Part shown: positions 6,919 to 47,964 of the stretch, in pieces
How positions within the stretch are numbered: position 1 is the first letter of the stretch
Layout: each line of letters opens with the position of its first letter
Assembly: GCA_002269645.1 (NCBI GenBank)
Contig: NIVC01000934.1
Location: 1 to 64,000, forward strand
Length of the DNA stretch: 64,000 nucleotides
DNA from: Macrostomum lignano
Taxonomy: Eukaryota
Direction: 5' to 3'
Position numbers and translations under genes: made by a program
The notes under the pieces: generated by a model
Databases searched by the model: none
The model's input: only the letters and a program-made list of their open reading frames with translations
What the model was told of the DNA's origin: nothing

Positions 6919-9900
6919 TCAGTAGTACGCGTTGCGCAATTGGATCAGCTTCTCCAGGCAGCGCCAGTGTCCGGGCGGGAACTTGCTCTCGGACTTGTGG
7001 GACAGCTCAGTCCAGCGGGGACGGCTCTTGGAGTCCAGCTGCGGGAGTGGGGGGGCAATAGGCTGCTGACCTGCTACTCATCTACAGCCTGCTGCTGGCC
7101 TGCCGCTTATCCACAGCCTGCTGCTAGCCTGCCGCTTATCTACAGCCTGCTGCTGACCTGCCGCTTATCTACAGCCTGCTGCTGACCTGCCGCTTATCTG
7201 CAGCCTGCTGCTGGCCTGCCGCTTATCTACAGCCTGCTGCTGGCCTGCCGCTTATCTACAGCCTGCTGCTGGCCTGCCGCTTATCCACAGCCTGCTGCTA
7301 GCCTGCCGCTTATCTACAGCCTGCTGCTGGCCTGCCGCTTATCCACAGCCTGCTGCTGACCTGCCGCTTATCTACAGCCTGCTGCTGGCCTGCCGCTCAT
7401 CTGCTGCCTGCTGCTGACCTGCCGCTTATCTACAGCCTGCTGCTAGCCTGCCGCTTATCTACAGCCTGCTGCTGACCTGCCGCTTATCTGCAGCCTGCTG
7501 CTGGCCTGCCGCTTATCTGACGCCTGCTGCTGACCTGCCGCTTATCTACAGCCTGCTGCTGGCCTGCCGCTTATCCACAGCCTGCCTGGCCTGCCGCTTA
7601 TCTACAGCCTGCTGCTGGCCTGCCGCTTATCCACAGCCTGCCTGGCCTGCCGCTTATCTACAGCCTGCTGCTGGCCTGCCGCTAGTCAGCCTGCTGCTGA
7701 CTTGAAAACTTGACTTTCACCCCAACAGCACTCCCGGCCGGACTCTAACCCTCGAGCATCACCCCCGGCCGGACTCTCACCCCCGAGCATCACCCCCTGC
7801 TGTACTCTCACCTTCAGCCGGACGCCGTCCCACAGCCCGCCGGTGTCGTCGTGCAGGCAGAAGGCGCGCAGCTCCAGCCAGGCGCTGTCGGTGTTCAGCT
7901 CGTCGTCCAGGTAGGCGCCACCGAAACCGGGGCCCGCCGCGGCCGTCACCTCGCTGAGACGCGCCGCGGCCGCCTCCGGGACCGTCAGCGGCGCCTGGCC
8001 GCCCTGCCGCTGCTGAGCGTCGGCCAGAAGGCGGCGACAGTCGCCGTCGATCGGCAGGCGGCGGGCGGGCAGCTCGGGAGCGCGGTAGCCGCCTTCGCCG
8101 GAGTCGGCGGGCAGCGCCAGCAGCTCCAGGGCGCGCTTGCCGCGGCGCTCCTTGTCTGACCAGCGGGTGACGAGCAGCAGGGCGCGGTGGTTCGGGCCCC
8201 AGGCGGGCAGGCGGCCGCGCCCCGCCAGGCCGGTGCGACCGGCCGGGTTCAGCGGCCGCCCGGTGGCCGCGTCCAGGCTGTAGGGGGCCGCGGCGAAGCT
8301 GCGCCGCTCCGAGCCGCTGGCCTCGTCGAAGGTGTTGAAGGCCAGACTGCAGGGGAGCGGAAAAAAGGGTGGCTTGGGGATCCAACTCGCAGGGTTGGTT
8401 ACCGAGGCTGAGGTTACTGGGGTCGCCACCGGTTTCTGGGGTCGCCACCGGTTACTGGGGTCGCCACCGGTTTCTGGGGTCGCCACCGGTTTCTGGGGTC
8501 GCCACCGGTTTCTGGGGTCACCACCGGTTACTGGGGTCACCACCGGTTTCTGGGGTCACCACCGGTTACTGGGGTCACCACCGGTTACTGGGGTCACCAC
8601 CGGTTTCTGGGGTCACCACCGGTTACTGGGGTCACCACCGGTTACTGGGGTCACCACCGGTTTCTGGGGTCACCACCGGTTTCTGGGGTCACCACCGGTT
8701 TCTGGGGTCGCCACCGGTTTCTGGGGTCGCCACCGGTTTCTGGGGTCACCACCGGTTTCTGGGGTCGCCACCGGTTTCTGGGGTCGCCACCGGTTACTGG
8801 GGTCGCCACCGGTTACTGGGGTCGCCACCGGTTACTGGGGTCGCCACCGGTTTCTGGGGTCACCACCGGTTACTGGGGTCACCACCGGTTTCTGGGGTCA
8901 CCACCGGTTTCTGGGGTCACCACCGGTTTCTGGGGTCGCCACCGGTTTCTGGGGTCGCCACCGGTTTCTGGGGTCGCCACCGGTTTCTGGGGTCGCCACC
9001 GGTTTCTGGGGTCGCCACCGGTTACTGGGGTCGCCACCGGTTACTGGGGTCGCCACCGGTTACTGGGGTCGCCACCGGTTTCTGGGGTCACCACCGGTTA
9101 CTGGGGTCACCACCGGTTTCTGGGGTCGCCACCGGTTTCTGGGGTCGCCACCGGTTACTGGGGTCGCCACCGGTTACTGGGGTCACCACCGGTTTCTGGG
9201 GTCGCCACCGGTTTCTGGGGTCACCACCGGTTTCTGGGGTCACCACCGGTTACTGGGGTCGCCACCGGTTACTGGGGTCGCCACCGGTTTCTGGGGTCAC
9301 CACCGGTTTCTGGGGTCGCCACCGGTTTCTGGGGTCGCCACCGGTTTCTGGGGTCGCCACCGGTTTCTGGGGTCACCACCGGTTTCTGGGGTCACCACCG
9401 GTTACTGGGGTCGCCACCGGTTACTGGGGTCGCCACCGGTTTCTGGGGTCGCCACCGGTTTCTGGGGTCACCACCGGTTTCTGGGGTCGCCACCGGTTTC
9501 TGGGGTCACCACCGGTTTCTGGGGTCACCACCGGTTTCTGGGGTCACCACCGGTTTCTGGGGTCACCACCGGTTTCTGGGGTCACCACCGGTTTCTGGGG
9601 TCACCACCGGTTTCTGGGGTCACCACCGGTTTCTGGGGTCACCACCGGTTTCTGGGGTCACCACCGGTTTCTGGGGTCACCACCGGTTTCTGGGGTCACC
9701 ACCGGTTTCTGGGGTCACCACCGGTTTCTGGGGTCACCACCGGTTTCCGGGGTCACCACCGGTTTCTGGGGTCACCACCGGTTTCTGGGGTCACCACCGG
9801 TTTCTGGGGTCACCACCGGTTTCTGGGGTCACCACCGGTTTCTGGGGTCACCACCGGTTTCTGGGGTCACCACCGGTTTCTGGGGTCACCACCGGTTACT

Positions 9901-12900
9901 GGGGTCACCACCGGTTTCTGGGTCACCACCGGTTTCTGGGGTCGCCACCGGTTTCTGGGGTCACCACCGGTTTCTGGGGTCACCACCGGTTTCTGGGGTC
10001 GCCACCGGTTTCTGGGGTCGCCACCGGTTTCTGGGGTCACCACCGGTTTCTGGGGTCACCACCGGTTTCTGGGTCACCACCGGTTTCTGGGGTCACCACC
10101 GGTTTCTGGGGTCACCACCGGTTTCTGGGGTCACCACCGGTTTCTGGGGTCACCACCGGTTTCTGGGGTCACCACCGGTTACTGGGGTCACCACCGGTTT
10201 CTGGGGTCACCACCGGTTTCTGGGGTCACCACCGGTTTCTGGGTCACCACCGGTTTCTGGGGTCACCACCGGTTTCTGGGTCACCACCGGTTTCTGGGGT
10301 CACCACCGGTTTCTGGGGTTACTACCGGTTCATCACCCAGCCCCCCAGACTCACCCAGCCCCCCAGACTCACCCAGCCCCCCAGACTCACCCAGCCCCCC
10401 AGACTCACCCAGCCCCCCAGACTCACCCAGCCCCCAGACTCACCCAGCCCCCCAGACTCACCCAGCCCCCAGACTCACCCAGCCCCCCAGACTCACTCAG
10501 CCCCCCAGACTCACTCAGCCCCCCAGACTCACCCAGTCCCCCAGACTCACCCAGCCCCCAGACTCACCCAGCCCCCAGACTCACCCAGCCCCCCAGACTC
10601 ACCCAGCCCCCCAGACTCACCCAGCCCCCAGACTCACCCAGCCCCCCAGACTCATCAACCCCCCAGACTCACCCAGCCCCCCCCAGACTCACCCAGCCGG
10701 ATCATCCCTGTCCACCTCGCCGTCAGCGTCGGGCTCCGGAGCGCTGAACTCGGGCGGCTTGTAGCCACCGGGCAGTTCGGCAGCCCAGGCCAGCTGGTCG
10801 GGCCGCAGCGGCAGGCGCGCCGGGCCGCCGGCACCAGGGTATGGCGACGTGAGCGACAGCGTCTGGCTCGGAGTCCCGCCCTTGCCTGCTGCACCGTGGC
10901 TGAATGAGGGCTCCATGGAGTCGCCGTCGGCGTCCGCCTCTCTGGGTCGGCTGTGGCCGCGCCTTCGGTGGCCGGGTGAACCTGGTTGATGATAAACAGG
11001 AGTGAGTGCCATTTGATCTCAGTGAGTGCCATTTGATCTCAGTGAGTGCCATTTCAACTGAGTGAGTGCCATTTCAACTGAGTGAGTGCCATTTCAGCTG
11101 AGTGAGTGCCATTACAACTGAGTGAGTGTCATTTCGTCTGAGTGAGTGCCATTTCATCTGAGTGAGTGCCATTTCAACTGAGTGAGTGCCATTTCTTCTG
11201 AGTGAGTGCCATTTCATTTGAGTGAGTGCCATTTCAACTGAGTGAGTGCCATTTCAACTGAGTGAGTGCCATTTCAACTGAGTGAGTGCCATTTCAACTG
11301 AGTGAGTGCCATTTCATTTGAGTGAGTGCCATTCCAAGCTCACCTCCGGAGCTCTCGGTGGCCGCCTTGAGCGACTGGACGGCGGTCATAAGGCTACTCA
11401 GGGTGCTCGTGACACTCTCGAACTGGAGCAGGAAGGGGGTGAAGCATTTGAAGGTTGAGAGTACAGTGAATCTGGGGATCTAATTCGAATACCCGGTGAC
11501 GCACTTGGCTCTCCAGTCTGGCGATTCGGTCAGCAACTTCCGGTGACATTTTGGCCACAACCATGTGCGGCTGCTGCTGCTGGGGTGGCGGCAGCGGCGG
11601 CGGCGGCAGCGCGGCCTGGGAGCCGGCCGAGGCAGCGGCTGGCAGCTGGTCCACTTTCTTGGAAAGGTTGGACAGCCTGCGGGGGCGGTGATGGAGATGG
11701 CTGCAGCTGCCCTGGGGTTTTTCGAATTACTGTTGACCTCAACTGACGTCATGCATGTAAGGCCCCGATAATCTATACTCATACTCATTCGATACTCATT
11801 CACCTTAGTGAGTCACCGATAATCTCTATTGACCTCAATTGGTCGTCGATGACCTTCATTGACCTCAATGGGTCGCCGATGACCTTCATTGACCTCAATG
11901 AGTCACCGATGATCCCTATTGACCTTAATGAGTCACCGATGACCTTTATTGACCTCAATGAGTCACCGATGACCTTCATTAACCTTAATGAATCACCGAT
12001 GATCTCTATTGACCTCACTAAGTCATCGATGACGTGCATTGACCTCGAGGTGTCACCGTTAACCTCAAATTGATTTCACCTCTTAACCTCTTGGCTCAGA
12101 AAAATGGCTTCCAATTCATCGATGACCTATTTGTGAATCCTATAGCTTAGAGATACCCGATCGACCTCAGTTAAATAAGCAATCATGATGAGCAAGTGCT
12201 CAGATGCATGAGCAATGCCACCTGCCAGCAACTCACTGGTCATTGCACTTCCTCAGGATGTTTTTATCGGCATCGCTATTGGCCTTCTTCATCCTGCGCG
12301 TAATCTCCAGGATATGCAGGCACTCCCAGTTCTTCAGCTGCCGTTCGACTGACTCGGAGAATCGGTGCTCTGCAATGTTTTATTGGCCGATATGTATCGA
12401 AATTATACTTTACACGATTGTTTGTTGATGCTAATCATACTACTAAGTAGATTGTAGAGATTCTCGCAATTAAAAAAACTTCAAGAGGTATTTTCAAGAA
12501 CAGAAAATAAAAAGACAAGCCGATATGTATCGAAAACAGAATAATGAATTGAAAATTGCTTATGGATGGGATTATTAGTAGTTACTCGGCTGAAGAAACT
12601 GTCGGAACATCTGACCAAGGACCACGAATGCCAAAGCTAAGAAATTAATTTATTTCACTAAATTTATCAATTCCATAACTTTGACGTCTTACGCCTTTTT
12701 TTCTGTTAATTCCCCAATAAAGATTGTGGCAGCTAAGCGGAATCGAACCCGGGACCTTCAGAGCGAGGCTTGGGGACTCACGCAGCGGGCTCCTGGTGTT
12801 GTAGCCGCAGCCGCAGCGGTGATTGGAGCAGCGCCAGCAGCGCTTGCACAGCAGACGGATGAGCTGGTAGGCGTGGGAGAAGATGATGAGGGGCGGCGGC

Positions 12901-15900
12901 AGGCAGGGCTTCTCCGAGTACTCCCGCACCAGGCTGATCCGCATGAACCGCCAGGTATCGTTTGTGTGGCCCTTCAGCGTGTTGAAGGTGTGCGCGAAGG
13001 TGGCGATCAGCAGGTTGAGCATGAGCACGTTGGCCAGGATGATGTAGGCGGCCAGCAGGATGGGGGAGATCCAAGTGCCCTCCGGCGTGGCGCACCGCGG
13101 CATGGTGTTGTTGGCCCACTCATCCTCATCGAAGGTGCACGGCAGCTCGCCCTGCATGATGTCCAGCTGGAACTCGCCGAAGATCTGGTAGAAGGCGCGC
13201 TGGTACACGTCCTTGATGAGGCCGGCTTCTTTGAAGGAGTTGGGGAACAGGATGGCCTGCTGGGCGATGCCGTAGCCCGTCACCAGCACCAGGAACACCA
13301 CCCAGAAGTGGAACAGGTCCCGGATCTGCGGGATGACGTGGCGTTAATTAAATCATTTTGGGATCAGAGTGAATCATTTTGGGATCAGAGTGAATCATTT
13401 AAGGATCAGAGGGAATCATTTGCGACATTAGAGTGAATCAATTAGGGATCAGTGTGAATCATTTTAGGATCAGAGTGAATCATTTGTGGGATCAGAGTGA
13501 ATCATTTTGGGGTCAGAGTGAATCATTTGTGGGATCAGAGTGAATCATTTTGGGATCAGAGTGAATCATTTGTGGGATCAGAGTGAATCATTTGCAATCC
13601 GAGGATTAGCCGGGCGCTCACCATCCGGCCGATCATGACCAGGTACGGTCCGAGCGCGGAGTCCAGCGAGTAGAAGTGCAGCAGCCGGAAGAAGAACAGC
13701 ACCAGGTCGATGGCGTAGAACACGCGGCCTGCGGCGAAGCCGTCCTCTGTGGGCTGCACGCGGCACACAATGCCCAGCAGGAACAGCACCAGGATGACCA
13801 TGTCCATGATGTTCCACGGGTCCGTGGCGTACTCGATCAGCTTCTCGCGGAACGTGTGCCGGTTCACGAATAGCGCCTGGGGATTCGGGGAGGTGGTAGT
13901 TTGGGGAGATTATGGGATTTGGAGATTGTGGGATTTGGCAGCTCGAGGAGAGGAGAGGATTTTGGAGATTATGGGATTTGGAGATTGTGGGATTTGGGGA
14001 GTTCGATGAGATTATGGGATTTTGGGAGTTGAGGAGATTGTGGGATTTTTGGAGATTGTGGGATTTGGCAGCTCGAGGAGAGGATAGGATTTTGGAGATT
14101 GTGGCATTGCAAGAGATTGTAGGGTTTGAGAGGATTTGAGACTTACAATAAGAATTTTTAGAGCACTCACCTGGCGGATCTCCTCCACAATGAGGGTGCC
14201 AATCCAGATCATGAGCATGATCTCGGAGGGGTGGATCACCGGGTTGAACTCGGTGAGGATCACATAGGTGTACAGCAGCAGGAACATCAGGTAGAACAGG
14301 TAGTTGTACATGAAGATCACCCGCGGCGACTGGTGGAATTCCAGCAGCTTGCGGCAGCAGCTGAGGGTGGAGCTGCCGCTCAGGAACCGGATGTTCTCCT
14401 TGGCCAGGCCGGTCTCCAGCTTCCGCCATCGGCGCGACAGGTCGTCGCCGGCCTCGGCCCGCCGCAGGAACAGCTCCTCGATGTCCTGGTCGGCGTCCAT
14501 CTGCTGCAGCTGGGCGAGGCGCCGCTGCCGGGTCTCGGAGCTGTACACCGTGCCAAGCAGGGCGCCAATGAGGTACAGCGGGAAGCAGGCGATGGTGAGC
14601 ACCACGTACACGAACAGCTTCAGCGTGGCGTTCTGGCTGGAGATGCCGCCGTTCCAGACGTCGTTGAGCAGCCGCTGCGGGGCGTCCTGGCTGACGAAGT
14701 CGAGGCTGTGCGAGTAGCTCGCCAGCTGCAGCGGCGTGGAGCTGCCGAAGAACTCGGAGACGCGGATGAGCAGCAGCTCGGAGCGGATCGGGTCGCTCTT
14801 GGACGTCTCGTTGCTGAGCTGGATGGCCAGCTGCTCGAACTCCCTGCCGGAGTTTTCGACAGACAGGGGGAGGGGGTGATGGAGCAGTAGGAGGCGGATG
14901 CTGAGCAGCTCAGTGAGAGGCGAGGCGTCTGAGTCTCGGGCCAGATGCACCTGAGCTCGATTCCGTGCGCGGCCCGCATTCAACTCAATCGGTGTGAGGC
15001 TTGAGGGGGAGAGGGAAAGGGAGAGGGAGAGAGGGAGAGAGAGAGGAAGAGGGAGAGAAAGAGGGAGAGAGGGAGAGGGAGAGAGGGAGAGGGAGAGAGG
15101 GAGAGAGGGAGAGGGAGAGAGGGAGAGAGAGGAAGAGGGAGAGAGGGAGAGAGAGGGAGAGGGAGAGAGGGAGAGAGAGAGGGAGAGGGAAAGAGGGAGA
15201 GAGAGAGAGGGAGAGGGAAAGAGGGAGAGAGGGAGAGGGAGAGGGAGAGAGGGAGAGAGGGAGAGAGAGAGAGGGAGAGGGAGAGAGGGAGAGAGGGAGA
15301 GAGAGAGAGGGGGAGAGGGAGAGGGAGAGAGGGAGAGAGAGAGAGGGAGAGGGAGAGAGGGAGAGGGAGAGAGGGAGAGAGGGAGAGGGAGAGAGGGAGA
15401 GGAGAGAGGGAGAGAGGGAGAGGGAGAGAGGGAGAGGGAGAGAGGGAGAGAGGGAGAGGGAGAGAGGGAGAGAGGGAGAGAGGGAGAGAGAGGGAGAGGG
15501 GGAGAGGGAGAGAGAGAGGGAGAGGGAGAGAGGGAGAGAGGGAGAGAGGGAGAGGGAGAGAGGGAGAGGGAGAGAGGGAGAGAGAGAGGGAGAGGGAGAG
15601 CGGGAGAGAGGGAGAGGGAGAGAGGGAGAGGGAGAGAGGGAGAGAGAGAGGGAGAGGGAGAGGGAGAGAGGGAGAGAGAGAGGGAGAGGGAGAGAGGGAG
15701 AGAGAGAGAGGGAGAGAGGGAGAGAGAGAGGGAGAGGGAGAGAGAGGGAGAGGGAGAGAGGGAGAGAGAGAGAGGGAGAGAGGGAGAGAGAGAGGGAGAG
15801 GGAGAGAGAGGGAGAGGGAGAGAGGGAGAGGGAGAGCGGGAGAGAGGGGCAACACAACAGAAGCTGAATCTGCCCGATCAGCTTTTTTAGTGAAATAAAT

Positions 15901-18900
15901 TGTCTGCGTATCCTTTTTTGAGCGTCAATCAGGTAAGAGGAGATAATGATCAAGGTAGGCTGCGGGGAGATGAGAGAAGGATGTGAAGGAAGGCACTCAC
16001 CTGGCCGCATCTCGGATCTCCTGCTGTTCACGCATGTCGTCCTCGATGTTGTCCGCGATTTCGCTCCACACCCGATGGGCGAAGAGGGCGGCGGTGAGCG
16101 GTTCGGTCACCTCCTCCCAGAGCAGGCGGGCCATGGACAGGCGGCTGGTGAGCACACTCCACACGAACAGATCGTTGAAGGGATCGTCAAAGTGCGGCAG
16201 GGTGGCCTCCTGCTCGTCCTCCCCTGCAGCAGTAAAATAAATAATCTTGCTGAAAATATTCTAGCAGCCTACTTTCAGTAGATGCAGTGTGCGTAAATAG
16301 ATTTATATAGACAGATTTTATAGGAGATTAAAAGCTACATGCATGCGGATAACGGATAATATAGCCAGAAACGGAGGTATAAGAAAGCTGAGCGCATATA
16401 AATCAAGGACGCAGGCCTAAAGAATCTGATTGGTCAATATTAGTCACGTGATTCGATAGATCGGGGTAGAAAATGTGGGGTTGCTTGCAAGATTTTGTAA
16501 AAAAGCAACCTCTCATAGCCACCAACCAATCAAATCAGTTTGTCTAATATTCAAGTAGCACTTGGTCAATACTAAATTTCTAGTGTCTTAGTGGTCGTTG
16601 CTTAGTCCGGAGTCTATAGCAACTAATATAAATGTTTCTCAAAGAACATTGCGTATTATGCATTGTGCATTAATAATAGCAGATGACTATGAGTAGAGTA
16701 CAGAGGGATCTAAGCGTGGTAACTCACAACAAATCCGTTTGAACTCTGAAAAAACAGCGGTGAAGGTTAGAGAAACAGAGTGAGTGTGATTGAGTTACAC
16801 CTGTCAAGTTAAGCAATTCAATTAGTCGCATAATTTGAGATGTTTAACTTTTGATTGAAATGAGTTTGTTAATAGTTAATTCGAATACGGCAGGTTTTTA
16901 CTAACGAAAAACGGTAAAATGTATTTCAATCGATCAGTCGTAGATTTTAGCATAAAATAAACCTGTGAATTTAGAATAATCTACCACTAGATTATAACAA
17001 AAATCAAACAGTAACTTTTAACAAATAATCAGCCAGTAAATTATAACAAGAAATCAACTAGCGGAATTCGTCAAGGTCCATCCAGTAGATTATAACAAAA
17101 ATCAAACAGTAACTTTTAAAAAATAATCAGCCAGTAAATTATAACAAGAAATCAACTAGCGGAATTCGTCAAGGTCCATCCAGTAGATTATAACAAAAAT
17201 CAAACAGTAACTTTAAAAAAATAATCAGCCAGTAAATTATAACAAGAAATCAACTAGCGGAATTCGTCAAGGTCCATCCAGTAGATTATAACAAAATCCA
17301 TTCCATAGATTTAAATAATTTCGGCGGATTTTAAAATTAACACTGCCCCGTCAGTTTTAACAAAAAAGCCACGCAAACCGGAAAAAAACACGTATTTTAC
17401 CGTCGGTTTTAGGAAAAAATGCCTACAGTTATTGAAAAAGGTTAGCAGATGGCTCAAAAACATAAAATTGAAATTAGAAAAAACTGTCTAGAAATAAATT
17501 TCCAAATAAAATTAATGTTTCAAATACCCCCACTCACTCTGAACATAGATGGGCAGGCGGGCGTTCTTCAGTATGGGCAGCTTCTCCTTGGTGTCCTGGT
17601 CGCCCACTGGGCCCGGCTCGTCCGGCCGGATGATCACGTCCGGGCACAGGCCGATGTAGCGGGGGTCGCTCAGGTAGGGCGACTGGAAGAACTGGCCGGC
17701 CACCGACTCCAGCACCTCGCCAACGTCTTCTAGCGAGAAATAGCGCTTGCCCTGGAGTTTGATGGCGTCAGGGTGTGGGAGTTCAATGCATGGGTGTCGG
17801 GATGTGGGGAATTCGATGCTTATAAAGTGTCAGGGTGTGGGGAATTCGATGCTTATAAAGTGTCAGGGTGTGGGGAATTCGATGCTTATAGTGTCATTAT
17901 GTGGGGAATTCGATGCTTATAAAGTGTCATTATGTGGGGAATTCGATGCTTATAAAGTGTCATTATGTGGGGAATTCGATGCTTTATAAAGTGTCAGGGT
18001 GTGGGGAATTTGATGTTCTAAGGTGTCAGAATGTCTCACCTTGTCCCTCATCTTCATGAACACCTTCCAGATGTACTCCTTGGCTCTGTTGTCTGGGTAG
18101 ATGGTGTTGTAGAGGAACACCAGCTTCTCAATGCTGAGAAACTCCTTCATCATGAAGTTGTTGTCCAGGAAGATCTTGACGAACTTCGGCCTATCCAGCA
18201 CCAAGGCCTTGTACATGAAGGGCTCCAGGGAATGGGTCTGCGGCGGAGGGGATGAATGGCAGGTTCGAGTTCAGCTGTGCCTGTTCTGAAACTTTTTATT
18301 TTGACATGAGAACAGAGAATTTCCAGATTGACTCACCGACCACTCGAATTCGCCGTCGAACACGATCTTCCTGGCGATGTCGTCCCGGTTCAGCGTCAGG
18401 GCGAGCTTCAGCTGGTCCTCCTTCTTGTGATTGGCTGCGCAGTTGCGGAGGCAAATGGGGGTGGGGTTAGTTTGCAATGTACATTAGCCTGACTACTCTA
18501 GGGCCAAAGCAATGTACATTAGCCTGACTACTCTAGGGCCAAAGCAATGTACATTAGCCTGACTACTCTAGGGAAAAAGCAATGTACATTTAACTACGAA
18601 TCCTATGTAATCTCATAATTATTATAGGGCCAAAGCAATGTACATCTAACTCATTTTTCTAGGGCCAAAGCAATGTATATTCAACTAATTATTCTAGGGC
18701 CAAAGAGATGCACATCCAACTAATTATTCTAGGGCCAAAGCAATGTACATCCAACTAATTATTCTAGGGCCAAAGCAATGTACATCCAACTAATTATTCT
18801 AGGGCCAAAGCAATGTACATCCAACTAATTATTCTAGGGCCAAAGAAAAGTACATTAGCTTAGTTTCTCTACTGCCAAGTGACAGAATCAGGATGTCCAA

Positions 18901-21900
18901 TTCTCTCGAGTGCACGAGAACTCAAAAAGCTTGCAAATAAGCGCAGTTCACCTTTCATAATGGCCTGCAGGATGGCCACATCCAAGTTGCACGAGAAATC
19001 GTCGCTCTCCAGCTCGTACACGCTGACCAGGTGGTCGTACTTGAGAATGGTCTCAATCCAGTCCATGAGCTCCGGCACGCGCTTGTCGCCGAACTCGCCG
19101 CGGAGTCGGCTGGTCAGCTGGCGCACCTGGTCCTCGGTGAGCTGCCGCTCCACGCTGCGGATTCAAACAAAATTGGCGCGGATTTGAATAGACGAGTGCA
19201 AGGGCTGAGATGAGAAAGTATTGTATAGGATTTCATTAGGATACTTTGAGAAAATTATTAGAAGATGGTGCACAAGGTGGTTTCACGGGTTACCGAATTC
19301 TAATTTAGAATATATGTTACTCATTTGGGACGAAGCCCGAAAATCTGGCGCCCCCTCACAGCAGCTGAGGCGCCCCTTGATGCTGGCGCCCTGACGATAG
19401 CGCTCCTGGTACTGCCCCTAGGATCGCTGCCCCCCAGAATGGCGCCCCCACGATGGCACCCCCATAGAATGGCGTCTCCCAGAATGGCGCCCCCAGAATG
19501 GCGCCCCCCAGAATGGCGCCCCCCAAAGTGGCGCTTCACAGAATGGCGCTTCACAGAATGGCGCCCCCAGAATGGTGCCCAACCCCAGAATTGCGCCTCC
19601 CCGGAATGGGGCCCCCAGAATGGCGCCCCACAAAATGGCGCCCCTCTAATTAGCGCCCCAGAAGGGCGCCCCACGATGGCACCACGATGGTACTGGCCTC
19701 ATCGATGGCGGCCACGCAGCACTTTTGCAGTCCCCATTCTCCCAACAATCCATGCAAGCCTTGCTGAGCATTTCAGAGGTGCCGAAATGACAAGCACTGA
19801 GTCCGTGATTTGAGTCTCGTGAGAATCAGCATTGTCAGCTTGCAGGAGAGGGCACCCCTGCAGATGCACCCGTATACAGGTACGTAAGCAGCGGCTCTGA
19901 CTTTCCCATTGTCAGGCAGTGCGCACTCACCGCACTACCTCGTTGCCATCGGAGTCCTCCACCACCGCCTTGCTCGGCAGGCTGTGCGCGTAGGCGTAGG
20001 CCAGGATGTCAGCGGCTCCCTGGCTGCCGCGGACCAGCAGCACTGGGGTGCCCTGCTCCACGGCGCACTTCACCGTCTGCACCGTGCCGGGGCCGCCCTG
20101 CACCACCAGGCAGACGGTGGGCACCTGGCCGGTGTCTTTGGCTGAGTCAGCCAAAGCGTGCTCGATTCGAGCTCGGGCGGGGATCTCGGTGCCGAACCGA
20201 AGCTGGGTGCCGTTGTCAACCAGCAGGAAGTGGGTGTGGTTCACGTCCAGGTTGCAGGTGTGCGGCAGCAGGCGGTAGCTGTGCCTGTAGGCCACCGGCT
20301 GCCCGCCGTGGCTGTCGCACAGCAACTGGTCTCTGCGGAGTTGGTTGAGGATGAGGCGGTGCTTGTTGGGGATTCTGGGTAGCGGCTGCAATGTCTGACC
20401 AGCATGTATGACCATCTCATCATTACCATGACAAGCATGCATGACCATCTCATCATTGCCATGACCAGCATGCATGACCATCTCATCATTGCCATGACCA
20501 GCAAGTATGACTATCTCATCATTGCTATGACCAGCAAGTATGACCATCTCATCATTACCATGACCAGCATGCATGACCATTTCATAACTGCCATGACCAG
20601 CAAGTATGACCATCTCATCATTACCATGACCAGCATGCATGACCATTTCATAACTGCCATGACCAGCAAGTATGACCAGCTCATCATTGCCATGACCAGC
20701 AAGTATGACCATCTCATCATTACCATGACCAGCATGCATGACCATTTCATAACTGCCATGACCAGCAAGTATGACCATCTCATCATTACCATGACCAGCA
20801 TGCATGACCATTTCATAACTGCCATGACCAGCAAGTATGACCATCTCATCATTGCCATGACCAGCAAGTATGACCATCTCATCATTACCATGACCAGCAT
20901 GCATGACCATTTCATAACTGCCATGACTAGCATGCGTGACCCATCATCATCCTATCATTGCCATGACCAGCAAGTATGACCATCTAATCATTGCCATGAC
21001 CAGCATGCATGACTATTTCATAACTGCCATGACCAGCAAGTATGACCATCTCATCATTGCCATGACCAGCAAGTATGACCATCTCATCATTACCATGACC
21101 AGCATGCATGACCATTTCATAACTGCCATGACTAGCATGCGTGACCCATCATCATCCTATCATTGCCATGACCAGCAAGTATGACCATCTCATCATTGCC
21201 ATGACCAGCAAGTATGACCATCTCATCATTACCATGACCAGCATGCATGACCATTTCATAACTGCCATGACTAGCATGCGTGACCCATCATCATCCTATC
21301 ATTGCCATGACCAGCAAGTATGACCATCTCATCATTGCCATGACCAGCGTACCCCCCTCATCTCATCTCACCTGTCAGCCACGGTGCCCCAGGGCGCGAT
21401 GCCCAGGCAGACCACTGGCCGCCCGACCCCGGATCCGTAGTCCTTGACCGCCTTGCCCGCCAGCTTCATGACGCCCTCGGAGGTGCCGCCGGTGATAATC
21501 CAGGCTCCCGTAGTCTTGGCGGCGTCCATCAGGCCTTTCTTGAAGGCCTTCTTCAGCCGTTTGTTCAGCTTGAGCTTCTTGGCGCCGCCAGTGACTGAGA
21601 TAATCATGTTGGGAGGCTGGAGTCCCCAGATCTCCATCAGGAGTGACTTCACCGTCTCTGGATCGGTCGCGGCGTCCATACGGACGTACTGGGGGCAACA
21701 GTGAGAAATGATATGGTTGCAATGCACTCGCAATAGCACAGAATTTCGTGAAGCCAGCCAGAGCTTCCTCCTCGCCTCACCTTAGAAATCTTGCCGCCAG
21801 GCAGCAGCATCTCTCCGCAAGCGTTGGTGGGGCCGCTGTCCGCGGTGCAGGTGTCCTCGCGCCACTTCTCGCCAACTCCGCCTGACCTGACGTGGTCGCC

Positions 21901-22223
21901 GCCAGCCGGGTAGCCACAGGCGCAGACCGCGTCATCGCTGATGGGGAGCATGTTTTGTTTATAACGATTTCAGTTGGCATCAGAGAATGCTAATAGCGTT
22001 ACTAAATAAAAAGACCAACCTTGAGTCGTCATCCGGTCCGTAGACAAACTTGACGCAGGATCGCTTCTTAAAGTTCCTCCGGATCCATTCTAACTCGGGA
22101 TCGGCATCTGCCTGTCTGCCCCTGACACCAGACTCCATAGGAATGTCCTCTACCTGGCCGTGCTCGTTAGAACGAAGGTCCGCGCCGCTGTCCTGCACCT
22201 TGTTGCTCCCAGCAGGTGGGCGC
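6919..22223 (-). CDS. TRPM2: TRPM2-like cation channel (MHR1-4, S1-S6, TRP helix, coiled coil, NUDT9-H); 18 exons; 5' end incomplete
   Basis: Phase-consistent GT-AG exons in transcript order: 22223-22020, 21937-21781, 21688-21372, 20332-19931, 19154-18952, 18434-18337, 18237-18040, 17751-17538, 16223-16001, 14843-14171, 13876-13622, 13325-12782, 12369-12237, 11676-11505, 11422-11344, 10981-10693, 8346-7812, 7038-6919 (4816 nt in total). Motifs: [119 protein letters not shown], and the C-terminal LRNAYY*. Confidence 0.95.
7065..7690. repeat. Intronic minisatellite, 29-bp unit CCTGCTGCTGGCCTGCCGCTTATCTACAG
   Basis: Fills most of the last TRPM intron. Confidence 0.95.
8413..10325. repeat. Intronic minisatellite, 19-bp unit GGGGTC(A/G)CCACCGGTT(T/A)CT (~100 copies)
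   Basis: Direct reading; explains the 810-aa and 792-aa ORFs. Confidence 0.97.
10335..10698. repeat. 17/18-bp array CAGACTCACCCAGCCCC(C); on the - strand these are tandem GG|GTGAGT donor copies
   Basis: Abuts the real donor at 10692. Confidence 0.93.
11000..11335. repeat. 20-bp array GAGTGAGTGCCATTTCAACT
   Basis: Direct reading. Confidence 0.93.
11795..12065. repeat. 30-bp array GAGTCACCGATGACCTTCATTGACCTCAAT (diverged)
   Basis: Direct reading. Confidence 0.85.
13350..13592. repeat. 20/21-bp array GGGATCAGAGTGAATCATTT(T)
   Basis: Fills TRPM intron 13326-13621. Confidence 0.9.
13895..14138. repeat. Diverged GGGATTTGGAGATT(G/A)T repeat with an internal duplication
   Basis: Fills TRPM intron 13877-14170. 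Confidence 0.75.
15003..15845. repeat. (GA/GGA)-rich purine microsatellite
   Basis: Direct reading. Confidence 0.95.
16986..17297. repeat. 98-bp tandem repeat, ~3 copies
   Basis: GTCCATCCAGTAGATTATAAC recurs at 17076, 17174 and 17272. Confidence 0.9.
17765..18028. repeat. 33-bp array GTGTCAGGGTGTGGGGAATTCGATGCTTATAAA
   Basis: Fills TRPM intron 17752-18039. Confidence 0.9.
18472..18858. repeat. ~35-bp array CTAGGGCCAAAGCAATGTACAT(CCAACTAATTATT)
   Basis: Direct reading. Confidence 0.88.
19345..19700. repeat. AGAATGGCGCCCCC-type short repeat cluster
   Basis: Direct reading. Confidence 0.75.
20398..21350. repeat. 33-bp array (CATTGCCATGACCAGCAAGTATGACCATCTCAT) with higher-order variant pattern
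   Basis: Fills TRPM intron 20333-21371. Confidence 0.93.
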
Positions 22224-24559
22224 CTAGATATCTAATACAGCCAAGAATGAAGCGAAAAATTTTTTATAAAAAGTAAAGTAAAAATATGAGTAAGAGTAAA
22301 AAGTCCAAATTTTCCAGCTTTTGAGAAATATTTTCTGACTCATTTATTAATCACAATCACAAAATCCCCGATATTATTAATAATTGATTACACTAGCTCA
22401 ACCTCAATGCATCTTTTGAGAAATGCTAAATCTAAGCAACAACACAAAAAAGCAGAAAAGACACGTACCCCAAATTTAGACTTTCCGGTCATTATATAGT
22501 TCTCAAACTGATGCTTTCATCAGTCAGATTGCTTGTCTTTTGATATAAATTGCAAATATACTACGATCAAAGAAAACGATTTTTCCAATATTCACAAAAC
22601 ACACTTTCGAAAGAAATTTAAAAGCGGCTGTAGTCAAGACAGAGCATACACATAAACATTTTACCAAAAAAGGTCAATGATATATTTCGTTTCGAAAAAA
22701 ACTTTAAATACCAAACTTGTTTAATTTGTTCAATAAAAATTTATTATCAAATTAATACTATTTGTTATTATATACAACACAGCTAAGACTCCTTTTCCTG
22801 GAAAAGTCTATCGTGCGAGCGAAAACAATAACCTTATGTGTAATAGGCCTATATAATACTTTAGGCCTAATAGGCAACGGCTAATATAGCTAGTTGCCTC
22901 AAAGGTTCTAAATTTCTTTTCATAATATCTTTCCTTGTATAATTTTTTGCTTACAGTATTTGCTGAGTCACTGCTGCTAGCCACTGGTATTGTCATTGAC
23001 ATCATTAGTACCTCTTATTTCAATTTTAGAAGGATTTAGATTTAGATAGATTAGATTTAGGATTGTGGTGTGTGCCAATCTAATGTAAGGCTAGGCTATG
23101 CACTATTATGGCAATAGCTGTAAATAATGCCAGTAGCATTAAGCTATTTTTATGTGTAAAACAATTTACATTTACTTTGGTCACAATTTAGTGACACCCA
23201 TTTTGGTGACAGGTTAGGCCTACTTTGGTGCCAAATATACGTATGGAGCATTCACTTCACTGTCAATGATTATTAATACATTTTAAAGGTGATTTAGGCA
23301 TAGTTCTAGTTTACTGTGTTAAATTATTTCGCCCTGATCTATTCAAGGGTAGGGGGGGTTGGAAGGGTGCAGCTGAAATCCCCATATTCAAAATCGTCAT
23401 ATGATAATGACGACTTGAACAAATCTCGAAGACTTAAACATTTAAATATGACGACTTTGACCAAAGGCAAGGGTGTATTAATTTTGGATTTTTCTACCTT
23501 TGGGCAAAAATCCCTTGCATATGCACCCGTAATTTTTATATTAACTGTGTCAATTAATGCTGATTCACCCCTGATTGCTGCATCAGCAATCAGGGTCGGC
23601 GTTGCGTTTGCGCAAATTAATCCGGAGAAATCGCGCAGACGAATCACAACAAAATTTTCTTTCTCCTGCTTACTCCGACAGCTGGGTTCTCAAGTCTAAT
23701 AAATCTAATAAAATTATAAAATAAAATGAACAAGTCTAAAGTGCGCAAAACTAATAAATAAATTTGATCTAAACTGTCGAATGCAAAAGGAAAAAGATAA
23801 GAAAAAGAAAAAGGAAAAGGGGGTTGAAAATTAGGCGGCACATCAAGGCAGTATAAATATTTAAAAAAGGAGGTTACAATCAATGGGTGGGGGTGCCGCT
23901 AGACACACTATTGGACCAAAAATCCCATGCGTGGAGACTACCGATATAACGGCTCACAAACATGCAAGCAACAAAGTAATGGTTATTAGTTCAAATATCA
24001 ATTACGTGGCACCCAACTGCCACACATGACTACTAAGAATACACAGTAAATTGTTTTAATTTGTTGGCAAACAAGAACACGCTGCCGCCATGAGCTAAGA
24101 TCCTTGCGCAGCCAATGCAACACAATATGACGATTTAGTGAATGCAGCATTGTCCAATACTGAGATGATGACAATTTAGATAATTTAGTTGTTTTTCTTG
24201 TAAGCCGCAGATGACAATCTCGAATATGACGACTTCGGCCAGAACCGGTTGGAATATAATGAAGTAAACTAGAACTATGCCGTGATTTAAAAAACATACA
24301 AATTTCCATGTACACTGAAGAAAATTCTCCAATATGCATCTCAAACCCTATTGCAGCGCATCTCAAAAATGTATGGATACCCTGTTTGTTGTTTGGTACA
24401 CAGCTGTGCAAACTAAATTTTATCAGAGGCGCACAGCCACACATTGCACAGTGCATATATCATTCGCCAACACTGCAATGCATGCAGTTCCATTTCATAT
24501 ATATATATATATATGTGTGCTTGCAAAAAAATCTATTGGTGTGCAAGCATGCCAATAGA

Positions 24560-28818: not shown

Positions 28819-28900
28819 ATATTTTGTTATTTTTTACTTTACTATTCATTAGGCCTCATGCCTAATGAATCCATTAGTCATCCAATAGTCTTGTAGCAAT

Positions 28901-46975: not shown

Positions 46976-47964
46976 GCGGAAGTTCTTCGGCTGCTGGAGG
47001 CTCGGCTGGGACCCGCTAGCTTTCACCGTCTCGCGCTGGGGCTTCGGCAGGCCCTAGCCTCCTCCTAGGCAGCCAATATATGGGCGAATCCGCTGGTCCC
47101 GCAGCCAATCGGCGCCCACCCCAGCCTCTTCCGCTTTCACCTGGCCAGCAACAGCAGCAGCCGCATGCAGCCTCAGCCTCCGGTCAGAAGGCTTCATCAA
47201 ACAGCAGCGGCAACAATACATCACTACCGCCCCCCCAACTTTCATTTAATTTTTTTGCCTCCCTCCTGAGCATCCGCCGCCGCTCCGACAGCCTCGCTCG
47301 CCGCTGGGTACTTTGTTTACCTCCGCAGTGTCCCCGACTCCGCGCTTCATCACTGCTTCTCACCACACTATATAGAGAACGCGACAGCCGCGGGAAGTGA
47401 ATGGGAAGGAAGGAGGGTGGATAAGAAATCCCCAGCAAGCCTGAGGGCAGCTGGCACTCAGCAGCAGCAGCAGCAGAAGCAGCAATATCCTTCTCAAACC
47501 CTGCTCGTATTTCGCATCGATTACCTCCCCCCTCCCTCCTCTCCTTCCCCGGGCCCGCGTGTCCCAGTTCAGTTCAGTCGCCGTCAGCTGCCCAGTGAAA
47601 GCAAACACAGCCCCAGTCCCAGCAGAGACTTGGCAGCGGTCCCCTCTTCCCACCGCCCGGGACAAAAAGCTGAATATGGAAATATGCTGCATTCGATCTG
47701 ACAGGCTGAGCTGCTGCTGTTGCTGGGAAGAATCTGCCACAAATTCAAGGCGTTTGGTGGATCGCTTGATTGGCGGGTGAAAATGCTTGCCCCAGTGTGG
47801 GTAATGGTGGCCATTGTCTGTCAGCAGGTGCGAGCCCTCACTCCCAAAAGTGCATTCTTTGTTCCACAATAATGGCAAGAATTGCGGGTGGCAGAATGTC
47901 ACCCTGACTGCAGGGAGTTCGGCAGAGTTCAACAGGCAGGGAGTTCAGGAGGAGACGGGAGTCG

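What the first reader, a model, noticed from the sequence alone, without database searches (positions are those of the whole stretch)
6919..8346. Invertebrate TRPM2-like channel whose NUDT9-H domain has lost the Nudix box
The NUDT9-H domain is clear ([21 protein letters not shown]…NTDSAW, HDDTG, LRNAYY). Where NUDT9 has WAIPGGMVDPGE…REFGEE, this protein reads [27 protein letters not shown], with no GG and no REFxEE acidic cluster. DDPRNTD becomes DDELNTD, losing the Arg recalled as R1433 in human TRPM2, an ADPR contact. AGDDA becomes KLDSK and LYASH becomes FPPGH. Characterised invertebrate and choanoflagellate TRPM2s are ADPRase-active chanzymes, and loss of activity is associated with vertebrates. 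This looks like an independent loss of catalysis, and perhaps of binding, in an invertebrate paralog.
Basis: partly seen in the sequence, partly recalled or inferred. Interest (0 to 1): 0.75.

Follow-up and report, generated by a model that had tools for sequence, protein, structure and literature searches.

The report
Flatworm TRPM2-like channel, dead Nudix domain
The region encodes the tail of an intact ion-channel gene of the flatworm Macrostomum lignano, in which an attached enzyme-like domain keeps its shape but has lost every residue needed for catalysis; this is real and mildly interesting, but it is one more case of a known and recurrent pattern.

Summary
On the minus strand, 8346-7812 and 7038-6919 are the last two coding exons of a 19-exon gene (22492-6919). 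NCBI already annotates it as Macrostomum lignano hypothetical protein BOX15_Mlig004825g3 (1615 aa).

- **Architecture:** the protein is a full-length TRPM2-like channel with SLOG/MHR, six TM helices, a TRP box, an intact Ca2+ site and a C-terminal NUDT9-homology domain.
- **Domain:** it keeps the NUDT9 fold (AF2 pTM 0.79; Foldseek TM 0.74-0.79 to NUDT9 and the TRPM2 chanzyme).
- **Losses:** there is no Nudix box in any frame. The ADPR-contact Arg is Leu and Tyr1485 is Pro.
- **Selection:** a spliced transcript from a related organism has the same exon structure and an equally degenerate box. dN/dS is 0.28, so this is a conserved pseudo-enzyme domain, not decay.

- No intact-box TRPM2 "parent" turned up in M. 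lignano among the hits whose source I identified.
- The other M. lignano NUDT9H channels (the praziquantel-target TRPM_PZQ clade) also lack the box.
- Degenerate boxes recur in gastropod, annelid and orthonectid TRPM2-like proteins, contrary to the published statement that all invertebrate boxes are canonical.

Loss of activity and of binding is inferred, not measured. I file it as a new member of a known kind; interest is moderate.

The parts
6919..22492 (-). Whole gene: a TRPM2-like cation channel with 19 coding exons, 1615 aa (NCBI BOX15_Mlig004825g3). My own exon model is: 22138-22020, 21937-21781, 21688-21372, 20332-19931, 19154-18952, 18434-18337, 18237-18040, 17751-17538, 16223-16001, 14843-14171, 13876-13622, 13325-12782, 12369-12237, 11676-11505, 11422-11344, 10981-10693, 8346-7812, 7038-6919. 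The annotated first coding exon, 22492-22469, is spliced to 22231.
   Evidence: I built the model from tblastn anchors and GT-AG junction scoring. It is identical to NCBI protein P0159 except for 39 extra N-terminal residues. It aligns over its full length to Nematostella TRPM2 at E=1.9e-202. Pfam finds LSDAT_euk, TRPM2 and Ion_trans.
19931..21688 (-). Exons encoding the SLOG/MHR1/2 domain, which holds the N-terminal nucleotide site. The equivalents of human Y295 and R302 lie at 20199-20161 (RFGTEIPAR: Phe and Arg). The equivalent of R358 lies at 20031-20008 (GSQGAAD: Gly).
   Evidence: Alignment with human-type, zebrafish, cnidarian, mollusc and amphioxus TRPM2. The roles of these residues are taken from PMC6759353 and PMC8145809.
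12782..14843 (-). Exons encoding S1-S6, the pore and the TRP helix. S2 VEEIRQ is at 14188-14171, S3 PWNIMD at 13819-13802, the filter IFGEFQLD at 13184-13161, and the TRP helix [12 protein letters not shown] at 12953-12918.
   Evidence: All five Ca2+-site residues (E, Q, N, D, E) and the invertebrate-type filter Glu are conserved. The praziquantel-pocket signature reads N-F-E, not the published N-I-E of Ml.TRPM_PZQ (PMC9910428).
10693..10981 (-). Exon encoding the linker and the N-terminal (cap) part of the NUDT9-H domain (…[35 protein letters not shown]…).
   Evidence: The junctions are 11344->10981 and 10693->8346. The exon matches the NUDT9 N-terminal region. Y6, R14, W24, Y32 and P34 of the domain query are invariant across 35 TRPM2-like proteins.
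8347..10692 (-). Intron filled with tandem arrays: a 19-bp unit x101 at 8412-10330 and an 18-bp unit x20 at 10333-10698.
   Evidence: TRF; junction scoring.
7812..8346 (-). Penultimate coding exon, encoding the NUDT9-H core. The former Nudix-box segment, [28 protein letters not shown], is at 8087-8004, and [10 protein letters not shown] is at 7907-7878.
   Evidence: Translation; alignments. The AF2 model keeps the strands, and a helix ([10 protein letters not shown]) sits where the Nudix helix would be, at pLDDT 62-70. The transcript contig L001 aligns to 8345-7811.
7039..7811 (-). Last intron, with a 29-bp minisatellite x22 at 7062-7699.
   Evidence: TRF. The donor is AAG/gtgaga and the acceptor cccgcag/CT. 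The intron is absent from the transcript contig L001.
6919..7038 (-). Last coding exon (LDSKSRPRW…[21 protein letters not shown], then the stop). Pro replaces the adenine-stacking Tyr1485 of human TRPM2.
   Evidence: Translation; alignment. L001 aligns to 7036-6919.

Best explanation
The finding lies in the last two coding exons of an intact Macrostomum lignano gene for a TRPM2-like (beta-TRPM) cation channel.

Its C-terminal NUDT9-homology domain is a conserved pseudo-enzyme. It keeps the NUDT9 fold but has lost the whole Nudix box, that is, the metal-binding and catalytic Glu residues and the GG loop. It therefore most likely cannot hydrolyse ADP-ribose. In M. lignano it has also lost two of the three residues that hold ADPR in the human NUDT9-H site (Arg to Leu, Tyr to Pro), so ADPR binding there is probably weak or absent.

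Because the domain is still under purifying selection, it most likely serves a non-catalytic role, structural or regulatory, for the channel.

The channel itself looks functional. The Ca2+ co-activator site, the selectivity filter and the TRP helix are intact. If a nucleotide gates it, that would happen at the N-terminal MHR1/2 site, as in the sea-anemone channel; here the aromatic residue and one of the two Arg residues are kept.

**Shown:** the gene structure, the domain identity, the absence of the motif, the predicted fold, the conservation, and a spliced transcript in a relative.

**Inferred:** no catalysis, weakened binding, and the gating mode.
For: - **Motif and exon structure:**
- **Existing annotation:** the model equals an NCBI protein.
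- **TRPM2 architecture:** full-length match to TRPM2 structures at E=1.9e-202, with Pfam SLOG, TRPM2 and Ion_trans domains.
- **NUDT9 homology:** E=1.4e-20.
- **Fold:** AF2 model with pLDDT 79 and pTM 0.79. Foldseek top hits are the NUDT9-H of the TRPM2 chanzyme (TMq 0.76-0.79, E about 1e-17), NUDT9 itself (0.74) and human TRPM2.
- **No Nudix box:** there is no Pfam NUDIX hit at E<=1, whereas canonical Exaiptasia TRPM2 scores 24.3 bits against a cut-off of 21.1. No Nudix-box-like peptide occurs in any frame of the window.
- **Key-residue table:**, with residue roles from PMC6759353 and PMC8145809.
- **Transcript evidence:** the intron-less contig L001 (SRR28338165; 80% aa identity) is colinear with the exons. 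It carries the same degenerate box, YRAPELAARRLPIDADCRQVLADAQ.
- **Selection:** Nei-Gojobori dN/dS is 0.28 for the two NUDT9-H exons and 0.34 for the ex-Nudix segment, against 0.14-0.20 for the channel core.
Against: - No activity or binding measurement exists.
- The ex-Nudix segment is the least confident part of the model (pLDDT 62-70), and I could not inspect coordinates for an alternative acidic cluster.
- dN/dS in this domain is somewhat higher than in the channel core, so constraint is relaxed.
- The relative keeps the Arg (DDERNTDNAW), so nucleotide binding may persist in the lineage.
- R358 of the N-terminal site is Gly. Gating by ADPR is therefore also uncertain. However, amphioxus has Gly at that position, and a choanoflagellate protein (P0044; species not identified here) has Leu there.
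Confidence: 0.8

Rival explanations
1. The loss did not happen in this gene's own lineage. The Nudix box was lost once in the flatworm stem, before the duplication that gave this gene and the TRPM_PZQ clade. On this reading the gene is simply the least derived survivor of a flatworm-wide pseudo-enzyme lineage.
For: - All NUDT9-H-bearing TRPMs recovered from M. lignano (P0061/P0152, P0076, P0128/P0153) and Schistosoma rodhaini TRPM_PZQ (P0010) lack the box and the AADP motif after WGPNH.
- The NJ tree joins this gene to that clade with 74% bootstrap support.
- No intact-box TRPM2 from a flatworm appeared among the hits whose source I identified.
Against: - The degenerate sequences are not alike: [17 protein letters not shown] here, against C(L/M)PW(F/Y)LTDH..CD..C in the TRPM_PZQ clade.
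- Support falls to 42% with more taxa, and long-branch attraction is evident.
- The shared Leu at the Arg position is convergent, since the relative of this gene keeps Arg.
- Identity to the PZQ-like paralogs (28%) is lower than to mollusc TRPM2-like proteins (33%).
Confidence: 0.45
2. The gene belongs to the sister family TRPS (soromelastatin, CED-11-like), in which the NUDT9-H catalytic residues are reported to be absent in every species. The loss would then be the ancient TRPS loss rather than a new one.
For: - TRPS has the same SLOG + channel + Nudix architecture and no conserved catalytic residues (PMC7306681, PMC13143021).
- Neither study sampled flatworms.
- With an unidentified divergent outgroup, the flatworm sequences fall to the base of the NJ tree.
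Against: - This protein is 30-34% identical over about 97% of its length to cnidarian, mollusc, deuterostome and human TRPM2-like proteins. CED-11 shares only about 18% identity with TRPMs.
- Solved TRPM2s score clearly above alpha-TRPMs.
- The inter-box segment and TRP box 2 ([14 protein letters not shown]) fit the TRPM2-like consensus EYxxRPxLxPPFI.
- The Ca2+ site and the invertebrate-type filter Glu are kept.
Confidence: 0.1
3. The domain is still an ADPR (or other nucleotide-sugar) hydrolase that uses non-canonical residues placed elsewhere in the fold.
For: - The fold is retained and under selection.
- A few acidic residues remain near the former box (D in PIDGD, D in LLADA).
Against: - Mutating just two Nudix-box positions in the Nematostella channel (E1443I/F1444L or E1446K/E1447K) is the published way of disrupting its ADPRase activity (PMC6461439). 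Here all of them, plus the GG loop, are gone.
- Human NUDT9-H, with a much milder change, is inactive.
- There is no Pfam NUDIX signal at all.
Confidence: 0.05
4. The degenerate box is an artefact: a pseudogene, an assembly frameshift, or a mis-called exon that hides an alternative Nudix-box exon.
For: Older UniProt models of the same locus (P0001-P0004, P0160) are riddled with frameshifts and chimeric ends.
Against: - In this window all exons are open with GT-AG junctions.
- The alternative frames hold no Nudix box.
- The box position lies in the middle of a 535-nt exon.
- An independent spliced transcript from a relative has the same structure and the same degenerate box.
- dN/dS is well below 1.
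Confidence: 0.03

Closest known systems
Invertebrate TRPM2 chanzymes (Nematostella vectensis nvTRPM2, PDB 6co7; Salpingoeca rosetta srTRPM2, PDB 8sr7)
   Same: The architecture is the same from end to end: SLOG/MHR, six TM helices, TRP helix, coiled coil and NUDT9-H. nvTRPM2 is the best solved relative (E=1.9e-202). The Ca2+ site and the filter Glu are conserved. The predicted NUDT9-H fold superposes on the chanzyme domain (TMq 0.76-0.79).
   Different: Those proteins have canonical boxes (AEFGEE, REFMEE) and hydrolyse ADPR (PMC6461439). Here the box, the GG loop and the AADP motif are all absent, and R1433/Y1485 are replaced.
Vertebrate TRPM2 (human, zebrafish): catalytically dead NUDT9-H
   Same: NUDT9-H is retained as a non-catalytic module on a TRPM2-type channel. 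This is the known precedent for a pseudo-enzyme domain of this kind.
   Different: Vertebrates keep WALPGG…PGE and change only REFGEE to RILRQE. They also keep DDPRNTD and bind ADPR there. The flatworm domain is far more degraded. The flatworm pore also keeps the invertebrate-type filter Glu, so the proposed coupling between 'loss of catalysis' and 'gain of pore inactivation' is not obviously repeated.
Flatworm TRPM_PZQ, the praziquantel target (Sm.TRPM_PZQ, Ml.TRPM_PZQ), and the 'nudix subclade' of flatworm TRPMs
   Same: Same phylum and, for Ml.TRPM_PZQ, same species. These are TRPMs with a C-terminal NUDT9-H whose Nudix box is also degenerate in my alignments. They may be the sister clade (74% NJ support).
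   Different: This is a different gene. The pocket signature is N-F-E, against the published N-I-E for Ml.TRPM_PZQ (which I see in P0153/P0152) and N-T-D in Schistosoma (PMC9910428). The protein is shorter (1615 aa, against 1670-1954 aa for the M. lignano TRPM_PZQ-like models and 2268 aa for Sm.TRPM_PZQ). Identity is 28%. The remnant sequence in the box region is unrelated.
Gastropod, annelid and orthonectid TRPM2-like proteins with partly degenerate boxes (Pomacea, Aplysia, Lottia, Physella, Lymnaea, Elysia, Owenia, Intoshia)
   Same: These are invertebrate beta-TRPMs in which the catalytic Glu residues are replaced. Aplysia and Pomacea are 49% identical to canonical-box Magallana, and Lottia 42%.
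   Different: Most still keep W-x-(I/L)-P-G-G, though not Owenia or Intoshia, and all keep DDPRNTDNAW. The M. lignano protein has lost these too.
TRPS (TRP soromelastatin; C. elegans CED-11)
   Same: SLOG + channel + NUDT9-H with non-conserved catalytic residues (PMC13143021).
   Different: TRPS is a much more distant family, about 18% identical to TRPMs. This protein is 30-34% identical to TRPM2-like channels and has a TRPM-type TRP domain.

Membership tests
TRPM2-like (beta-TRPM with NUDT9-H) channel | N-terminal SLOG/MHR1-2 and MHR3-4 (TRPM2-like) domains | tested here: met
   Pfam LSDAT_euk at E=6.4e-67 and TRPM2 domain at E=1.5e-45.
TRPM2-like (beta-TRPM with NUDT9-H) channel | Six-TM ion-transport domain, pore loop and TRP helix | tested here: met
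   Pfam Ion_trans at E=8e-18. The filter is IFGEF and the TRP helix [12 protein letters not shown].
TRPM2-like (beta-TRPM with NUDT9-H) channel | C-terminal NUDT9-homology domain | tested here: met
   phmmer to NUDT9 at E=1.4e-20. The AF2 model and Foldseek give TMq 0.74-0.79.
TRPM2-like (beta-TRPM with NUDT9-H) channel | Closer to TRPM2 than to other TRPM subtypes | tested here: met
   PDB ranking: TRPM2 at E-202 to E-170, against TRPM3 at E-156, TRPM4 at E-143 and TRPM8 at E-133. The best database hits are proteins named 'TRPM member-like 2'.
TRPM2-like (beta-TRPM with NUDT9-H) channel | Transmembrane Ca2+ co-activator site (human E843, Q846, N869, D872, E1073) | tested here: met
   All five residues are conserved in the alignment.
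TRPM2-like (beta-TRPM with NUDT9-H) channel | MHR1/2 ADPR site (human Y295, R302, R358) | tested here: inconclusive
   The residues here are F, R and G. Phe is the usual invertebrate state. Gly at R358 also occurs in amphioxus, and a choanoflagellate protein (P0044; species not identified) has Leu there.
TRPM2-like (beta-TRPM with NUDT9-H) channel | Activation by ADPR plus Ca2+ | not testable with these tools
   This needs inside-out patch clamp.
Active NUDT9-type ADPRase (chanzyme) | Nudix box GX5EX7REUXEEXGU with catalytic Glu residues | tested here: not met
   The box is absent in all alignments. There is no Pfam NUDIX hit at E<=1, and no such peptide in any frame of the window.
Active NUDT9-type ADPRase (chanzyme) | ADPR-contact residues of NUDT9-H (human D1431, R1433, Y1485) | tested here: not met
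   The residues here are D, L and P. The related transcript keeps the Arg.
Active NUDT9-type ADPRase (chanzyme) | ADPR hydrolysis | not testable with these tools
   This needs an enzyme assay.
TRPM_PZQ (praziquantel-activated flatworm TRPM) | VSLD pocket signature (S1 N, S4-S5 T/S/I, TRP D/E) and orthology to Sm.TRPM_PZQ | tested here: not met
   The signature here is N-F-E. M. lignano P0153/P0152 carry the published N-I-E, and S. rodhaini P0010 carries N-T-D. The PZQ clade is monophyletic without this gene at 100% bootstrap.
TRPS (soromelastatin) | Sister-clade position to all TRPMs, with a divergent TRP box 2 | tested here: inconclusive
   The identity levels and the TRPM-type TRP domain argue against membership. 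However, no verified TRPS sequence was available, and the NJ trees are unstable.

The most novel reading that the evidence does not exclude
Flatworms as a phylum lost ADPRase chemistry in their TRPM2 lineage before the origin of the praziquantel target. The surviving NUDT9-H pseudo-enzyme was then repurposed as an assembly or regulatory module, or as a sensor for a ligand other than ADPR. On this reading the M. lignano gene is the least derived member of that lineage. With Gly at R358, Leu at R1433 and Pro at Y1485, it may no longer be gated by ADPR at all. It would also show that losing catalysis need not be coupled to the vertebrate-type pore inactivation.
Probability: 0.25. Interest if true: 0.6.

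Novelty: new member of a known kind. Interest (0 to 1): 0.42.

Why it matters
- **Published view:** two evolutionary studies hold that invertebrate TRPM2 channels are all active chanzymes, and that loss of catalysis is a vertebrate event tied to pore inactivation (PMC6461439, PMC13143021). Neither study sampled flatworms.
- **What this gene adds:** together with the degenerate boxes I found in the TRPM_PZQ clade and in several gastropod, annelid and orthonectid proteins, it shows that the loss is recurrent in protostomes. Here the invertebrate-type filter Glu is retained, which gives a natural test of the proposed coupling.
- **Relevance to the drug target:** a 2024 review says nothing is known about the enzymatic capacity or binding of the NUDT9-H domain of the praziquantel target (PMC11731825). 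The sequence evidence here predicts that it, too, is catalytically dead.
- **Tractability:** M. lignano is a laboratory model, so the channel can be knocked down and expressed.

Tried and rejected
1. **Failed word-index search.** The search for homologous proteins with the pore exon, given as a DNA reference, returned nothing, although an identical protein (P0004) is in the collection. I treated this as a tool failure. The later search with the full protein as letters worked.
2. **Is this gene the cloned Ml.TRPM_PZQ?** No. The pocket signature is N-F-E, not N-I-E. The TRP-helix Glu is at about residue 1127 (P0159 numbering), not 1495.
3. **Is the shared Leu in DDxLN(T/A)D a synapomorphy with the PZQ clade?** No. 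The relative's transcript has Arg.
4. **Frameshift artefact.** The other frames and the whole window lack any Nudix box.
5. **Phylogeny.** Only distance/NJ trees were possible. Support for a flatworm clade is 74% or 42% depending on the taxa included, so I leave the relationship open.
6. **Flatworm orthologs.** Look-ups of 30 hits found none outside Macrostomum except S. rodhaini TRPM_PZQ. The word-index search was exhausted before Schmidtea or the other schistosome 'nudix subclade' genes could be fetched.
7. **Supplementary table of PMC9910428.** The table with the Ml.TRPM_PZQ identifier is not held.
8. **Source organism of SRR28338165.** It could not be established.
9. **Pfam on the isolated 217-aa domain.** No hit. 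The precomputed NUDT9_N family (PF25969) is listed for the full protein, but it is not in the local Pfam copy's hit list.
Full report
**1. What is at the coordinates**

The feature is on the minus strand. Bases 8346-7812 form one open exon that ends in AAG/gtgaga. The following 773 bases are an intron that contains 22 copies of a 29-bp minisatellite (7062-7699). Bases 7038-6919 are the last coding exon, ending in ...LRNAYY and a TGA stop. KLDSK spans the exon junction.

**2. Organism and gene**

A protein search found 100% identical fragments from Macrostomum lignano, a free-living flatworm. I used a recalled human TRPM2 sequence only as a lead to locate exons with tblastn. I then scored GT-AG junctions and assembled an 18-exon, 1576-aa model. 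It proved identical to NCBI 'hypothetical protein BOX15_Mlig004825g3' (P0159, 1615 aa), which has 39 more N-terminal residues from a short first exon at 22492-22469. The gene is therefore already annotated, but unnamed. Older UniProt models of the locus (P0001-P0004, P0160) are frame-shifted chimeras with misleading names.

**3. It is a TRPM2-type channel**

- The model aligns over its whole length to Nematostella TRPM2 (E=1.9e-202), then to zebrafish and human TRPM2. These score ahead of TRPM3, 4, 1, 7, 8 and 5.
- Pfam finds the SLOG (LSDAT_euk), TRPM2-like and Ion_trans domains.
- The five residues of the transmembrane Ca2+ site and the invertebrate-type filter Glu are conserved.
- The best database relatives outside Macrostomum are lophotrochozoan proteins named 'TRPM member-like 2' (33-34% identity, about 97% coverage). 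Echinoderm, hemichordate, amphioxus and cnidarian proteins come next, then vertebrate TRPM2. No other flatworm protein is in the top 120.

**4. The NUDT9-H domain**

Homology:
- The domain matches NUDT9 at E=1.4e-20 and the NUDT9-H of the two characterised chanzymes at about 5e-17.
- An exhaustive HMMER scan of 1.84 billion representative proteins found only four hits below 1e-30, all from M. lignano. The next hits are at about 1e-25 and 35% identity. The domain is therefore strongly diverged.

Fold:
- An AlphaFold2 model built on 35 TRPM2-like sequences has mean pLDDT 79 and pTM 0.79.
- Foldseek places it on the NUDT9-H of the Salpingoeca chanzyme (TMq 0.76-0.79), on NUDT9 (0.74) and on human TRPM2.
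- The strands are kept, and so is a helix ([10 protein letters not shown]) where the Nudix helix would be. This segment has the lowest confidence in the model (pLDDT 62-70).

**5. The Nudix box is gone**

- In alignments of 129 and 52 NUDT9-type domains, canonical proteins read W-A-I-P-G-G-x5-E-x7-(R/A/K)-E-F-x-E-E. This protein reads [28 protein letters not shown].
- No Glu aligns to any catalytic position in either the MAFFT or the HMMER alignment.
- Pfam NUDIX gives no hit at E<=1. For comparison, Exaiptasia TRPM2 scores 24.3 bits (above the cut-off), Liolophura scores E=0.008 and Pan TRPM2 E=0.15.
- No frame of the exon, and no frame of the 64-kb window, holds a Nudix-box-like peptide. An alternative exon within this window is therefore excluded.
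- The AADP motif after WGPNH is RALL.
- R1433 of DDPRNTD is Leu, D1431 is kept, and Y1485 is Pro. The roles of those residues come from PMC6759353 and PMC8145809.

**6. Not decay and not an artefact**

P0161 is encoded by a 3720-nt contig (L001) assembled from public run SRR28338165. Its source organism is not given. At 80% aa identity and dS 0.55 it is most likely another macrostomid.

The contig has no introns, and its blastn blocks end within a few bases of my exon boundaries. This includes 8345-7811 followed directly by 7036-6919. It is therefore a spliced transcript, and it confirms the 3' exon structure.

Its box region is equally degenerate (YRAPELAARRLPIDADCRQVLADAQ), but it keeps DDERNTDNAW.

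Nei-Gojobori dN/dS against the window CDS:

| Region | dN/dS |
|---|---|
| Overall | 0.20 |
| MHR3/4 to pre-S1 | 0.14 |
| TM core | 0.20 |
| Two NUDT9-H exons | 0.28 |
| Ex-Nudix segment | 0.34 |

The domain is constrained, somewhat less tightly than the channel.

**7. Relation to what is known**

Flatworm TRPMs with NUDT9-H are known. The praziquantel target TRPM_PZQ is one, and two more schistosome TRPMs form a 'nudix subclade'. A 2024 review states that nothing is known about binding or catalysis by this domain. Planarian TRPM-a1 and TRPM-f also carry the domain. Ml.TRPM_PZQ has been cloned and has the pocket signature N-I-E, with the TRP-helix Glu at residue 1495.

I used the published residue numbers on S. 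rodhaini P0010, with an offset of 767. That protein reads N-T-D and is therefore the TRPM_PZQ ortholog. M. lignano P0153 and P0152 read N-I-E. The window's gene reads N-F-E, so it is a different gene.

All of these flatworm proteins also lack the Nudix box, but their remnant is unrelated: C-(L/M)-P-W-(F/Y)-L-T-D-H…C-D…C, with DDxLNADxAW.

NJ trees join the window's gene to the PZQ clade with 74% support. This drops to 42% with more taxa, and there are clear long-branch effects. I leave this relationship open.

**8. The loss is not unique among invertebrates**

Iordanov et al. 2019 and a 2026 MBE study state that the catalytic residues are conserved in non-vertebrate TRPM2/beta-TRPM. Neither study sampled flatworms.

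In my alignment, deuterostome invertebrates, cnidarians, bivalves and Lingula are canonical or near-canonical. The following are not:

| Species | Box region |
|---|---|
| Pomacea | EKYFLFE |
| Aplysia | KADFSED |
| Lottia | MTVFARE |
| Physella | (replaced) |
| Lymnaea | (replaced) |
| Elysia | (replaced) |
| Owenia | KASLTHD |
| Intoshia | KNKFIRE |

Aplysia and Pomacea are 49% identical to canonical-box Magallana, and Lottia 42%, so these belong to the same orthogroup and not to TRPS. Several choanoflagellate paralogs are degenerate too. What sets the M. lignano protein apart is the extent of the loss. It alone among the beta-TRPM-like set has also lost the PGG loop, the AADP motif and the DDPRNTD Arg.

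**9. Mechanism**

Most likely (0.8): the channel is functional and its NUDT9-H is a non-catalytic, conserved module. Gating probably needs Ca2+, since the site is intact.

If a nucleotide is the agonist, it would act at MHR1/2, as in Nematostella, where NUDT9-H is dispensable for gating. At that site Phe and Arg are retained and R358 is Gly. That Gly is not decisive, because amphioxus has Gly there and a choanoflagellate protein (P0044; species not identified) has Leu.

The role of the dead domain is inferred only from its conservation. It could be structural support, an inter-subunit contact as in vertebrates, or a new ligand site.

**10. Rivals**

These are set out in Rival explanations: a single flatworm-stem loss (0.45; compatible with the main explanation, but against 'independent loss in a paralog'), TRPS membership (0.1), residual non-canonical catalysis (0.05), and artefact or pseudogene (0.03).

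**11. Verdict**

- **Observation:** confirmed.
- **Interpretation:** supported with caveats.
- **Novelty:** the gene is annotated but uncharacterised. I did not find the loss of the box in flatworm TRPM NUDT9-H domains stated in the papers I could read. The phenomenon itself (a NUDT9-H pseudo-enzyme on a TRPM channel) is known from vertebrate TRPM2 and from TRPS. I file it as a new member of a known kind.
- **Interest:** moderate.

Noticed in passing
window 1-64000; for example 8412-10330, 7062-7699, 27090-28819, 31252-33360, 38007-39806, 47967-50673, 60665-63278: The window is extraordinarily rich in minisatellites. TRF reports 77 rows at score >=200, with arrays up to 2.7 kb and units of 10-99 bp. 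Many of them fill the introns of the TRPM gene and its neighbours, and they produce long spurious ORFs on both strands.
   Followed up: partly
P0001-P0004 and P0160 (UniProt M. lignano entries A0A1I8JPL0, A0A1I8IDY…, A0A1I8IXU0, A0A1I8IYQ2, A0A1I8IUM9): Older public protein models of this same locus are frame-shifted and chimeric, and carry misleading names: 'CIA30 domain-containing', 'Endostatin domain-containing', 'Phorbol-ester/DAG-type domain-containing'. Parts of them are out-of-frame translations of exon 8346-7812.
   Followed up: partly
L001 (Logan contig from SRR28338165), residues aligned to window 7907-7878: The related transcript keeps Arg in DDERNTDNAW, whereas M. lignano has [10 protein letters not shown]. 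The Arg-to-Leu change is therefore recent. It is convergent with the Leu found in all TRPM_PZQ-clade proteins (DDxLNAD).
   Followed up: yes
P0165 Aplysia, P0168 Pomacea, P0032 Lottia, P0176 Physella, P0191 Lymnaea, P0180 Elysia, P0167 Owenia, P0254 Intoshia: These TRPM2-like proteins of gastropods, an annelid and an orthonectid have catalytic Glu positions replaced. Aplysia and Pomacea are nonetheless 49% identical to canonical bivalve orthologs, and Lottia 42%. This contradicts the published generalisation that all invertebrate TRPM2 Nudix boxes are canonical.
   Followed up: partly
P0010 (Schistosoma rodhaini CAH8536228.1), P0153/P0152/P0076 (M. lignano): The NUDT9-H of the praziquantel-target clade also lacks the Nudix box. 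It carries a conserved Cys-containing insert instead (LPW(F/Y)LTDH..CD..C). [quoted passage not shown]
   Followed up: partly
window 12836-12786 (minus strand); protein [18 protein letters not shown], just after the TRP domain: A cluster of six Cys in 17 residues follows the TRP helix. It is conserved in the related transcript ([18 protein letters not shown]). It could be a metal-binding or acylation site, but I did not investigate it.
   Followed up: no
window 33449-34492 (+), with probable upstream exons from about 28900: A myotubularin-related phosphatase gene (Pfam Myotub-related at E=1.8e-68), with the CSDGWDRT active-site motif.
   Followed up: partly
window 46256-47026 (-): A single-exon KCTD8/12/16-like gene (BTB_2 plus the H1 domain, E=2e-56).
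   Followed up: partly
window 53810-54412 and 59372-60169 (-): Exons of a phosphorylase b kinase regulatory subunit gene (KPBB_C at E=4e-23; Glyco_hydro_15-like at E=1.4e-12). The gene runs on towards the right end of the window.
   Followed up: partly
A homology search with a DNA reference to the pore exon returned no hit, although an identical protein is in the collection. The same region found hits when the protein was given as letters.
   Followed up: no
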